Positions 5,183 to 8,383 of a stretch of 64,000 nt of DNA are shown piece after piece. The position numbers were made by a program, and so were the translations under genes. The stretch spans positions 6,758,001 through 6,822,000 of the forward strand of contig NC_047067.1 in the NCBI RefSeq assembly GCF_902459465.1, given 5' to 3'. This stretch comes from Asterias rubens (taxonomy: Eukaryota). A model generated the notes under the pieces. That model did not search any database. It was not told the DNA's origin and saw only the letters and a program-made list of their open reading frames with translations. Each line of letters starts with the position of its first letter. The first letter of the stretch is position 1.

Positions 5183-5479
5183 TGTCACATGCAATTATGT
5201 CCTCTATGCAATACTATCCGGAGGACATTATTGCATATGCAATAAAGTCCGCCGGACTTTTTTGCATATGCTATCGTGTCCGCCCGGACGCTGCTGCATA
5301 CTGCAATTGTGTCCGCCCCCGTGCAAAACCGTCCTTGCAGTAAATTAAACGCCCTTGGTCAACGGAACACGTTCGCCATTTTTTTACAAGCTAAGTGCAT
5401 GTCATGAATGACTTGGGAAATGTTCGGCCGTTGGGTTTTCGCTGCGATCATAAAGTACGTGTGAATATCCATCCTGCAT
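5183..5479 (-). mobile_element. Ginger1-like MITE, one half (interrupted by LINE fragment)
   Basis: ccgg|TGTCACATGCAATTATGTCC. Reverse complement of 17621-17955 of the intact copy. Confidence 0.8.
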
Positions 5480-8225
5480 TTATGATAGAAACTGGCCAAC
5501 TTATTGTTACAGGTGGAAATAAATTTTTCCATGGCATAATAATTTTTGAGTTCTGTTTTGAATACTAAGAAGGATGGTTTGTTCTTGGACATTTTCATTT
5601 TGTAGATGTGAAAACGGCAAATTAATAAAATAAGGTTAGCAGCTTTACACTTAAAGTCTGTTTTGCCAAATAAAAATGTTTCATGGTCAAGGATGATGTT
5701 ACGCTTAGTCTTGTAAATAATCCATGAAGCAACTGCTGTCCAAAAAGAAATTGTAGCGGCACATGAGCAAAACAAATGAATAAGAGTCTCCCCCTGGCTA
5801 TTACAAAAAGTACATAAATTAGAGTCCAGCTTTTTGATTTTGAAAAGAAAACTGTTTGTACCTAGAATTCTATGAATAAGTCTATACTGGAACCATCTTA
5901 GTCTAGTGTCTATTGTGCAGTTGAAAGGAATATTGAAAATTAACGACCATTTAGAAAAACTATTATCTATTTGCAAACTAAAGTTCCACTTAGAAATAAA
6001 TGTATAGGTGACTTTCCTGGAGGAGGTCAAGACCTTTAGGATTCTGCTGGAGCCTTTTTTGTCCCTCAAAAGGGTCTTGAAATTGAATGGAATAAAAGGA
6101 AGTTGAACAGTACCTTCCGTAAAAGACAGAATGTTTGGAAAAGCAGACTTAATGGCCCTGACCACACCCCCATGTTCCAGAAAATTAGTTTTAATGTGAA
6201 ATTTATTTCTGAAATCATTGAAGGACAAAAAATTCCCGGCAACATCAACAAGGTTATGAATATAATTGACTCCTGCCGACTCCCAATGTTTGAAATAGAT
6301 GCATTTTTTATCCACCTTAATTTTGTCATTGTGCCACAGAGAATTGGTCAATATTTCTTCAGCGGTCTCTGGGCTGTGTGCCATGGTGAATTTTGACCAG
6401 GATGTAAAGACATTTCTCCAAAAAGGGTTCCCGTACAAAGTTTGTTTATGTGCATAAAGTAATTTCAGGGAACCACCTTCAAAACTGGACAATCCAGAAA
6501 TGCCCATAATCTTTTGGAATAAATGGACCCAACCACAACCATTGTCAGAAATTAGGAGTCTGCGGAGCCAAGTTATTTTAAGGGCGTTCATATATTCACG
6601 AACATCTATCATACGGAGCTCATCTTGGCTGTAATCTTGAACCATTTGATTTCTGCATACCCGGTCATGTCCCCTCCAAATAAATTTAAATAACATAGAG
6701 TTCAGTTCGTTAACAGTACTAACAGGTGGATCAGGGATGGTTAAAATAAGAAAGTTAAGCTTAGACAAAAGCAAAGATTTGGCAACAGTGATTCGGCAAG
6801 CATTCGAGATTCCTTTTGGACCAACTCGAAATCAGGTTACGCAAAGAAAGAATAGTCGTGTTGTAGTTGAGTAGAACCATGGAATGCAGATCTATGGAAA
6901 ACTGAATACCAAGTATTTTAAAGGTTTCTAAAGGTTCCACCCAATGGGCATTGATCTCTTTTATTCTCTTTACATATCTTGCTTTCTTGCCCTTTCTTTG
7001 ACCCTATCCAAACCACATTAGTTTTGTCTACATTGACTTTAAGTCCGGACATGTTGGCAAATGCGTCAAGGATATTAAATGCAGCAAGCATAGATTTAGC
7101 GGAACCATCAAGAAATAAAACAGTGTCATCGGCATACTGGGATAAACGAAACTCTTTACCGGCTACCCGAATACCTTTTAAATCTTCATCATTATCTATC
7201 ATCATAGCAAGAACTTCAACACACATACTAAATAAATAGGGGCTTAGACCGTCACCTTGCCTGCAGCCCCGTTCTATATTAAATGATTCAGAAAGAAAAC
7301 CGTTCACCAGAATCGAAGACGAGGCCTGCTTATAGAAGAGGTTGATCCACTGTTTTATGGATGCACCAAAGTTGAATTTATCAAGAACTTTGAGGATAAA
7401 CTCATGTGATAGTGAATCGAAAGCTTTTTCAAAGTCAATGGAAATTAATTGACCAGGAATGTTATTCGAATCGGTGACATCAAGTAAGTCATACATCAAA
7501 CGAATATTTTCACCAATGAACCGACCTGACATAAAACCTTTTTGACGCTCATTAATAATGATGGGTAGACAAGTTTTCAGTCTCTCAGCAATACACGCCG
7601 ACGCCACTTTATATGATGTGTTCAGCAGGGAAATAGGACGCCAATTTTTTAAAAACTGCCGGGGTTTGTCCCCTTTTGGTAACAAAGTGATGATGCCGTA
7701 TTTCTGAGTGACTGACAACTTGCCCGAGAAATAAGCAAAGTTGAGTGAGCGTAAGAGGAACCACGATAAATCAGGCGAAAAGAATTTGTAAAATTCAAAA
7801 CTGAACCCATCGGAACCTGGGGATTTAGCATTCTTACTATTCTTTAAAGCTTGCATAAGTTCTACATGCGACAAAGGGGCTTCCAGATTATCCCGCATTG
7901 TGTCTGTAAGAATGGGAGCATTGGCTTTCTCGAAAATAGAATTTAAATCAGCCAAGTTATTAACCTTCCGATGAGATTACAGATTTTTGTAGAAATTCCT
8001 GGCTTCTGAAAGAATTTCTTTAGATTTGGTCAATCTGGAATCTGCATCATTACCAACACAATTGATAGATTTACTAACGTAACTACGTTTCTCCATATTC
8101 AGAAAATACTTGGATGGTTTTTCTCCGCATTCCATCCACCGTGTTCTAGATCTTATAAGTACACCATCCATTTTGATTTTACGAACATCTACCAGATCAG
8201 CTTGTTTAGCACTTAAGAGATCGAT
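5480..8225 (-). mobile_element. L1/Tx1-clade LINE ORF2 fragment (RT plus C-terminal zinc knuckle), inactive, truncated at both ends
   Basis: GVLIRSRTRWMECGEKPSKYF; RT motifs NWRPISLLN, IDFEKAFDS, RGCRQGDGLSPYLF, SQYADDT; C-terminal RLRWFQYRLIHRIL and CTFC...ETLIHLFCSC. In-frame stop at 7977-7979 and frameshifts in about 6780-6960. No ORF1, endonuclease, 3' UTR or tail. Confidence 0.93.
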
Positions 8226-8383
8226 TGCATATTATAGTACGTAGGTTCAGTGCATGCACGCACATACCTGTACAGTCATGTACATGTCCACCGGACGGTT
8301 TTTGCATAGCCCCGGACACGATTGCATATGCAAAAGTGTCCGGAGCGGATAGTATTGCATGGCGGACACAATTCCATCAGACA
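8226..8383 (-). mobile_element. Ginger1-like MITE, other half
   Basis: AGGTTCAGTGCATGCACGC...GGACACAATTCCATCAGACA|ccgg matches the reverse complement of 17546-17620, with extra subterminal repeat units. Confidence 0.75.

What the first reader, a model, noticed from the sequence alone, without database searches (positions are those of the whole stretch)
5183..8383. A 2.7-kb L1/Tx1 reverse-transcriptase fragment packaged inside a Ginger1-like DNA transposon shell
Seen: both halves of a MITE (intact 410-bp copy at 17546-17955) flank the LINE fragment. The 3.2-kb composite keeps both TIRs and CCGG flanks (5179-5182, 8384-8387). The breakpoint maps to ATGCA at about 17621-17625 of the empty copy, and TGCAT appears at both junctions (5475-5479, 8226-8230). 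Established: Tx1-clade LINEs are often target-specific, and Xenopus Tx1L/Tx2L insert into the DNA elements Tx1D/Tx2D. Inference: this is either a Tx1 family that targets a Ginger MITE, or a Pack-type composite that a Ginger transposase could move. Chance insertion is also possible.
Basis: partly seen in the sequence, partly recalled or inferred. Interest (0 to 1): 0.72.

Follow-up and report, generated by a model that had tools for sequence, protein, structure and literature searches.

The report
LINE fragment nested in old MITE
A broken piece of an ordinary L1-type jumping gene landed once inside an older copy of a small Ginger1-type DNA transposon. It is a one-off nested insertion, not a targeted or travelling composite, and its only oddity is that the piece lacks its tail.

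Summary
Window 5183-8383 is one copy of a high-copy MITE of about 490 bp, split by a 2,751-bp antisense piece of an L1-type LINE (5477-8227). CCGG flanks the whole element, and TGCAT sits at both inner junctions.

The MITE fits published Ginger1 hallmarks: a 4-bp CCGG/CCGT duplication, TGTNR ends and imperfect inverted ends of about 70 bp.

- **Other LINE copies:** 14 other copies have variable 5' truncation and a poly(A) tail. Nine show 10-17 bp duplications, mostly A-rich. All have unrelated flanks, and none lies in the MITE.
- **Uniqueness:** both junction 80-mers occur once in the 417-Mb assembly.
- **Relative age:** sampled MITE copies are about 92% alike, while the LINE piece is about 98% like full-length copies. 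The LINE therefore entered an old resident MITE.

It covers LINE nt 2430-5166 of 5340 and lacks the last ~160 nt of unique sequence plus the poly(A) tail, about 174 nt in all. The MITE itself lost nothing, and the junctions share 3 nt and 2 nt with the LINE.

The best reading (about 0.5) is a single atypical retrotransposition primed inside the RNA. The rivals are a normal insertion followed by a deletion, or DNA-level repair. Interest is low.

The parts
5179..5182 (.). Left 4-bp target-site duplication (CCGG) of the MITE
   Evidence: the same 4 bp recur at 8384-8387. In other copies, variant flanks are repeated directly, so they are a duplication and not part of the inverted ends.
5183..5479 (.). 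MITE arm 1: the TGTCAC end, an imperfect inverted end of about 70 bp and 31-nt subterminal repeats, running up to the family TGCAT
   Evidence: About 95% identical to the column majority of 20 family copies. It lacks one subterminal repeat unit of about 33 nt.
5475..5479 (.). TGCAT, left copy of the 5 bp present at both inner junctions. CAT (5477-5479) is also LINE sequence.
5477..8227 (-). Piece of an L1-type LINE, nt 2430-5166 of a 5,340-nt full copy. It lacks 2.4 kb of the 5' end and the last ~174 nt (about 160 nt of unique 3' sequence plus the poly(A) tail).
   Evidence: It differs from a full copy by 37 mismatches in 2,735 nt, four indels and two in-frame stops at about 7979 and 6974.
7011..7676 (-). 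Reverse-transcriptase domain (RVT_1) within the LINE piece
   Evidence: residues 94-315 of window:6918-7955:-, E 4.4e-35
5740..6003 (-). C-terminal zinc-binding domain (zf-RVT) of LINE ORF2
   Evidence: residues 258-345 of window:5480-6774:-, E 9.3e-7
8226..8230 (.). TGCAT, right copy. TG (8226-8227) is also LINE sequence.
8226..8383 (.). MITE arm 2, ending in GACA
   Evidence: About 94% identical to the column majority of the family.
8384..8387 (.). Right 4-bp target-site duplication (CCGG)
17546..17955 (-). Second copy of the same MITE family, uninterrupted, in reverse orientation to the composite. It sits between CCGGs and is about 80 bp shorter than typical copies.

Best explanation
A copy of an old, high-copy Ginger1-type MITE sat at this CCGG site. 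Much later, one RNA of an ordinary, non-site-specific L1-type LINE family was copied into it in a single atypical retrotransposition.

The proposed steps are as follows (all are inferred; see the end of this statement).
1. The window + strand was nicked after TGCAT (5'-GCAT/ATTA).
2. That 3' end has no T-run to pair with the poly(A) tail. Its last three bases, CAT, paired instead with an AUG inside the LINE RNA, about 25 nt before the ORF2 stop. Reverse transcription started there, which explains the missing 3' UTR and poly(A).
3. Copying stopped about 2.7 kb on, giving the usual 5' truncation.
4. The cDNA end joined the other strand through a 2-nt match (TG/CA). That strand had been cut 5 bp away, so TGCAT now stands on both sides.

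The result is a dead reverse-transcriptase piece, with two stops and frameshifts, inside a MITE that still has both ends.

**Shown here:** the anatomy, the uniqueness of the junctions, the lack of targeting and the relative ages.

**Inferred:** the internal-priming steps.

Whatever the exact route, the broader conclusion (one-off event, not targeted, no sign of movement as a unit) has about 0.9 confidence.
For: - **Truncation at both ends.** 17 loci holding other LINE copies (14 independent copies; three copies appear in two overlapping loci) run on past window 5477 into a shared 3' UTR with AATAAA and poly(A). The piece maps to LINE nt 2430-5166 of 5340.
- **MITE intact.** The arms abut at a single family TGCAT with no loss.
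- **Microhomology.** CAT at the left junction and TG at the right junction are shared by the LINE and the MITE. A blunt insertion would recreate a 5-bp duplication by chance only about once in 1,000.
- **Geometry.** Two 3' ends overlapping by 5 nt is the geometry of target-primed reverse transcription.
- **No targeting.** 14 other copies lie in unrelated flanks with variable 5' truncation and poly(A); nine of them show 10-17 bp duplications, mostly A-rich.
- **Uniqueness.** Both junction 80-mers have one full-length match in the genome, with all candidates scored. The outer flanks are single copy.
- **Age order.** The LINE piece is 98.0% identical by BLAST to a full copy, or 1.35% substitutions in a global alignment. 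MITE copies are about 92% identical pairwise and the arms are 5-6% from the family majority.
- **Precedent.** 3'-truncated, tail-less L1 insertions with microhomology at both ends are documented in humans (PMC1920257).
Against: - Sequence alone cannot separate internal priming from a normal insertion that later lost its 3' end.
- A 5-bp duplication is shorter than the 10-17 bp seen in nine other copies.
- GCAT/A is a poor match to the A-rich targets the family normally uses.
- No pre-insertion allele was found.
- The read data were only short contigs of repeats and gave no view of the junctions in other individuals.
Confidence: 0.5

Rival explanations
1. Normal insertion followed by a deletion. 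The LINE inserted by standard target-primed reverse transcription, with a poly(A) tail and a longer duplication ending in ATGCA (for example about 10 bp of the AT-rich MITE sequence). A later deletion of about 190 bp between short ATG repeats removed the 3' UTR, the tail and the first bases of the downstream duplicate.
For: - The upstream flank in LINE sense reads ...ACTATAATATGCA. A 10-13 bp duplication starting in its AT-rich part would resemble those of other copies.
- The LINE ends in ...ATAAATG and the MITE resumes at ATGCA, so a 3-nt repeat is available for such a deletion.
- The piece carries other small indels.
Against: - It needs two events.
- The deletion must end inside a window of a few bases so that the MITE reads on without loss or leftover A's.
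- My rough estimate, not measured, puts this several-fold below a single atypical insertion.
Confidence: 0.22
2. DNA-level repair. A break in the MITE was mended by copying 2.7 kb from a genomic LINE copy, either by templated insertion or by microhomology-mediated synthesis. No RNA step was involved.
For: - The piece is internal to the LINE, with no tail.
- There are 2-3 nt of microhomology at both junctions.
Against: - Such repair does not predict a clean 5-bp duplication with no loss of target.
- The 5-nt overlap of 3' ends fits staggered nicking by a LINE endonuclease better.
- No donor copy sharing the piece's private changes was identified among those examined.
Confidence: 0.13
3. Pack-type mobile composite. 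A Ginger1 transposase has moved, or can still move, the 3.2-kb unit. It is in one copy only because cut-and-paste movement does not multiply it.
For: - Both ends and a perfect CCGG duplication are kept, with only 1 and 2 mismatches in the terminal 20 nt against the family.
- At 3.2 kb it lies within the published 2.6-7 kb range of full Ginger1 elements.
Against: - The junctions are unique.
- Among the 20 family copies sampled, no pair is more than 94.7% alike, so there is no sign of recent activity, while the insert is young.
- No inner MITE sequence was replaced, unlike capture by gap repair.
- No autonomous partner could be examined.
Confidence: 0.05
4. Target-specific LINE. This is a Tx1-like family that homes to this MITE, as Xenopus Tx1L does to Tx1D.
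For: Only the single nested copy itself.
Against: - 14 of 14 other copies lie elsewhere, in unrelated sequence. Those with a mappable duplication mostly have A-rich targets.
- The one copy in the MITE lacks the 3' end that a homing insertion would carry.
Confidence: 0.02

Closest known systems
Ginger1 DNA transposons, non-autonomous derivative (Bao, Kapitonov and Jurka 2010, PMC2836005)
   Same: A 4-bp target duplication that is CCGG in most copies and CCGT/ACGG in some. The ends read TGTNR, and the inverted ends fall within the published 40-270 bp range.
   Different: It is short (about 490 bp) and has no coding capacity. The integrase-like transposase that defines the superfamily was not found or linked to these ends here.
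L1-superfamily LINEs (human L1 ORF2p as solved reference)
   Same: It has an ORF1 and an ORF2 with an AP-type endonuclease, a reverse transcriptase and a C-terminal zinc-binding domain. It carries AATAAA and a poly(A) tail, variable 5' truncation and 10-17 bp duplications, mostly A-rich.
   Different: It comes from an unnamed marine organism. Whether it belongs to the L1 or Tx1 clade was not resolved.
Non-classical (endonuclease-independent) L1 insertions (Sen et al. 2007, PMC1920257)
   Same: 3' truncation, no poly(A) tail, a target unlike TTTT/A and microhomology at both junctions.
   Different: Those loci were defined by having no duplication, and 18 of the 21 carry target deletions. Here 5 bp stand on both sides and nothing is deleted.
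Xenopus Tx1L within Tx1D (recalled from the literature, not read here)
   Same: A LINE sits inside a DNA transposon.
   Different: There the nesting is the rule for the family, at a fixed target. Here it is one copy out of at least 15.
Pack-MULE and other Pack-type transposons
   Same: Foreign sequence lies between intact transposon ends with a duplication.
   Different: Pack elements carry host gene pieces that replace the inner transposon sequence, and they occur in several copies. Here the cargo is a transposon piece inserted without any loss, in a single copy.

Membership tests
Ginger1 (non-autonomous member) | 4-bp target-site duplication, CCGG (about 75%) or CCGT/ACGG (about 24%) | tested here: met
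   One search lists 20 copies, and the composite makes 21. Of these, 10 have CCGG on both sides and 4 more have CCGG with one changed or shifted base. There are also CCGT/CCGT twice, ACGG/ACAG once, GGGG/GGGG once, CCCC/CCCC once and 2 irregular pairs. The definition is from PMC2836005.
Ginger1 (non-autonomous member) | Termini follow TGTNR | tested here: met
   one end reads TGTCAG and the other TGTCGC. The composite has TGTCAC and TGTCTG.
Ginger1 (non-autonomous member) | Terminal inverted repeats of about 40-270 bp | tested here: met
   imperfect inverted ends of about 70 nt, about 79-80% matched.
Ginger1 (non-autonomous member) | Mobilised by a Gypsy-integrase-like transposase (YPYY, H2C2, DDE, GPY/F, often with OTU or Ulp1) carried by an element with the same ends | not tested
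The only lead is from coordinates: an rve match and an OTU match lie 4.4 kb apart on contig C12.
L1-superfamily LINE | ORF2 with AP-type endonuclease, reverse transcriptase and C-terminal zinc-binding domain | tested here: met
   Exo_endo_phos 6.7e-8, RVT_1 4e-35, zf-RVT 1.8e-6 on a full copy; human L1 ORF2p at E 4e-64, against R2 at about 1e-26.
L1-superfamily LINE | Poly(A) tail, variable 5' truncation, variable-length duplications at A-rich targets | tested here: met
   for other copies. The window copy itself lacks the tail.
Tx1 clade, target-specific LINE | Most copies inserted at one defined target sequence | tested here: not met
   14 other copies in unrelated flanks, none in the MITE.
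Tx1 clade, target-specific LINE | Placement in the Tx1 clade by reverse-transcriptase phylogeny | not testable with these tools
   No reference set of L1 and Tx1 sequences was at hand. One search gave only unnamed clusters.
Pack-type composite transposon | Transposon ends and duplication enclose foreign sequence | tested here: met
Pack-type composite transposon | Foreign sequence replaces inner transposon sequence (capture during gap repair) | tested here: not met
   the arms abut at one TGCAT with no loss and a 5-bp repeat.
Pack-type composite transposon | Evidence of mobilisation: further copies with the same inner junctions at other target sites | tested here: not met
   each junction is found once in 417 Mb, with all candidates scored.
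Non-classical L1 insertion (Sen et al. 2007) | 3' truncation of more than 20-25 nt and no poly(A) tail | tested here: met
   about 160 nt of unique 3' sequence plus the tail are absent.
Non-classical L1 insertion (Sen et al. 2007) | No target-site duplication of any length | tested here: inconclusive
   TGCAT stands at both junctions. All 5 bases can also be read as LINE letters (CAT and TG).

The most novel reading that the evidence does not exclude
The 3.2-kb unit is still a substrate for a Ginger1 transposase in this genome. It has moved by cut-and-paste at least once since the LINE piece came in. That would make it a natural Ginger1 element carrying retrotransposon cargo, with a LINE piece that entered by internally primed reverse transcription at a staggered nick.
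Probability: 0.05. Interest if true: 0.35.

Novelty: new member of a known kind. Interest (0 to 1): 0.14.

Why it matters
It matters little beyond annotation. Nested transposons are common, and this one shows neither targeting nor movement as a unit.

Two small points are useful:
- The MITE family gives a clean, high-copy example of Ginger1 structural hallmarks in a marine organism. This helps repeat annotation of the genome.
- The insertion is a tidy example of a LINE piece that lacks its tail yet sits between a short duplication with microhomology at both ends. Human surveys of tail-less L1 insertions excluded this class on purpose. A census of such cases could show how often LINE reverse transcription starts inside the RNA.

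Tried and rejected
- **Public runs.** The stretch was laid on four public runs. All were short contigs dominated by the repeats. Joints that skip about 2.8-3.1 kb are simply other MITE copies. No listed contig bridges an inner junction, so nothing can be said about polymorphism.
- **Metagenome scans.** Exact scans of metagenome contigs for both junctions found nothing. This is uninformative, because the organism may not be in that collection.
- **Fetching genome sequence.** I tried to fetch full LINE copies as single loci and to find the autonomous Ginger1 partner.
- **Coordinate-only lead.** Comparing OTU and rve matches by coordinates gave one co-location, at contig C12 17.247-17.252 Mb. It could not be read.
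- **Atlas look-up of ORF2.** It returned only unnamed RVT_1/zf-RVT clusters and did not help with L1 versus Tx1.
- **Gap-repair capture.** Rejected as the origin, because no MITE sequence is missing.
- **Assembly chimera.** Rejected, because the junctions are precise, carry a 5-bp repeat and have single-copy outer flanks.
- **Consensus sequences.** None was built for the LINE. A column majority of the MITE alignment was used only to compute identities and was not printed.

Full report
**What is there**

- An element bounded by TGTCAC at 5183 and GACA at 8383 sits between two CCGGs (5179-5182 and 8384-8387).
- Its outer parts match, in reverse orientation, a second element at 17546-17955 that is also flanked by CCGG.
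- The inner 2.75 kb reads on the minus strand as a LINE ORF2. RVT_1 scores E 4e-35 and zf-RVT 9e-7.

**The MITE family**

The own-genome search found 1,157 first-look candidates for the 410-bp copy, of which 40 were scored at 86-91% identity.
- Full copies are 452-497 bp. The window's 410-bp copy is therefore a shortened member with complete ends.
- The four flanking bases are a true target duplication. They are CCGG in most copies. Where they differ, the variant recurs directly on both sides: CCGT/CCGT twice, GGGG/GGGG once and CCCC/CCCC once.
- The ends read TGTCR and the inverted ends are about 70 nt and imperfect.
- The arms hold 31-nt palindromic subterminal repeats around GCATATGC.

These are the published Ginger1 hallmarks: 4-bp duplications that are CCGG in 75% and CCGT/ACGG in 24% of elements, TGTNR ends and 40-270 bp inverted ends (PMC2836005).

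**The LINE family**

The piece has close relatives at 87-98% identity at about 20 places in the genome.
- Two full copies share 5.34 kb. They hold an ORF1 of about 280 aa and an ORF2 of about 1,290 aa with an AP-type endonuclease, a reverse transcriptase and a zinc-binding domain.
- Both full copies end in a 3' UTR with AATAAA and a poly(A) tail.
- Human L1 ORF2p is by far the best solved relative, at E 4e-64 against about 1e-26 for R2.
- Fourteen independent copies show variable 5' truncation and poly(A) tails. Nine have clear duplications of 10-17 bp, mostly A-rich. All have unrelated flanks, and none is in the MITE.

So this is an ordinary, non-site-specific L1-type family. The L1 versus Tx1 clade was not resolved.

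**The insert is cut at both ends**

All 17 loci holding other copies (14 independent copies, three of them seen in two overlapping loci) run on past window 5477 into the shared 3' end.
- The window piece equals LINE nt 2430-5166 of 5340.
- It stops about 25 nt before the ORF2 stop codon. It lacks about 160 nt of unique 3' sequence and the tail.
- It differs from a full copy by 37 of 2,735 bases and four indels, and it has two in-frame stops. It encodes nothing functional.

**The junctions**

Aligned with 19 family members, the two MITE arms meet at a single family TGCAT with no base lost. That TGCAT now stands at both junctions.

Three-way comparison shows two overlaps:
- CAT (5477-5479) is shared by the MITE and the LINE at the left junction.
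- TG (8226-8227) is shared by both at the right junction.

A blunt insertion would recreate five matching bases by chance about once in a thousand. The two target 3' ends therefore overlapped by 5 nt, which is the geometry of target-primed reverse transcription.

The simplest single-event reading has these steps:
1. The + strand was nicked at GCAT/A.
2. Its CAT end primed on an internal AUG of the LINE RNA instead of the tail.
3. The cDNA was joined 2.7 kb on through a 2-nt match.
4. A second nick 5 bp away gave the short duplication.

Tail-less, 3'-truncated L1 insertions with microhomology at both ends are known in humans. However, that survey deliberately kept only cases without any duplication (PMC1920257).

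I cannot exclude the following alternatives:
- A normal insertion with a longer AT-rich duplication, followed by a deletion of about 190 bp between ATG repeats.
- Templated DNA repair.

My rough odds for the three routes are 0.5, 0.22 and 0.13.

Both junction 80-mers have exactly one full-length match in the 417-Mb assembly. All first-look candidates were scored, and every other match covers only the LINE half or only the MITE half. The outer flanks are single copy and there is no alternative haplotig.

**Relative ages**

The sampled MITE copies are about 92% alike pairwise, and no pair exceeds 94.7%. The composite's arms are 5-6% from the family majority, like any other copy. The LINE piece is about 98% like full copies. 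The LINE therefore entered a long-resident MITE.

Cut-and-paste movement of the unit since then cannot be strictly excluded, because such movement need not leave a second copy. Nothing supports it, however. Capture by gap repair is disfavoured because no inner MITE sequence was replaced.

**Reads and other collections**

Runs holding the stretch are from marine samples, with coded organism names.
- Only short contigs were available, and they do not inform on the junctions.
- One run has contigs that match the outer flanks into the MITE ends. The contig at the left flank matches without differences.
- Summed contig depth over the MITE arms is thousands of times that of the unique flanks. This fits a very high copy number but is not a count.
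- Exact scans of metagenome contigs for both junctions found nothing.

**Verdict**

The Ginger1-like label is well supported on structure. The LINE belongs to the L1 superfamily. The nesting is a one-off event. The only unusual detail is the tail-less, doubly truncated insert between a 5-bp repeat. Interest is low.

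Noticed in passing
window 4860-4960: There is a tRNA-like box (GGTTCGAATCC) just upstream of the composite, with very high summed contig depth in all four runs over 4900-5026. It is probably a tRNA-derived SINE copy.
   Followed up: no
L020-L030 (for example G000:C14:10114450-10116113): A second L1-type family is about 67-70% identical to the window piece. At least a dozen copies match the same extent of the query (about nt 1106-2771).
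   Followed up: no
L017 and L002/L031 (G000:C2:23373866-23381807): A short 5'-truncated LINE copy lies 2 kb from the full-length copy. The sequence after its tail equals the two flanks of the full copy joined together. This looks like an empty-site duplicate of that insertion locus.
   Followed up: partly
G000:C12:17247104-17251985: An integrase-core (rve) match and an OTU protease match lie 4.4 kb apart on the same strand. Several OTU-bearing open frames of 1,100-1,400 aa also cluster on contig C15. These are candidate autonomous Ginger1 elements, but they could not be read.
   Followed up: partly
window 5205-5320 and 17790-17935: The MITE arms are built of 31-nt units, each a near-palindrome around GCATATGC flanked by GGACA/TGTCC. 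These are likely transposase-binding repeats. The composite's left arm lacks one unit.
   Followed up: partly
L006/L008 (G000:C1:13304265-13306807) and L007/L009, L016/L018: Several LINE copies carry internal deletions of about 70-300 nt at different places. Sizeable deletions inside this family are therefore not rare, which bears on the deletion rival.
   Followed up: no
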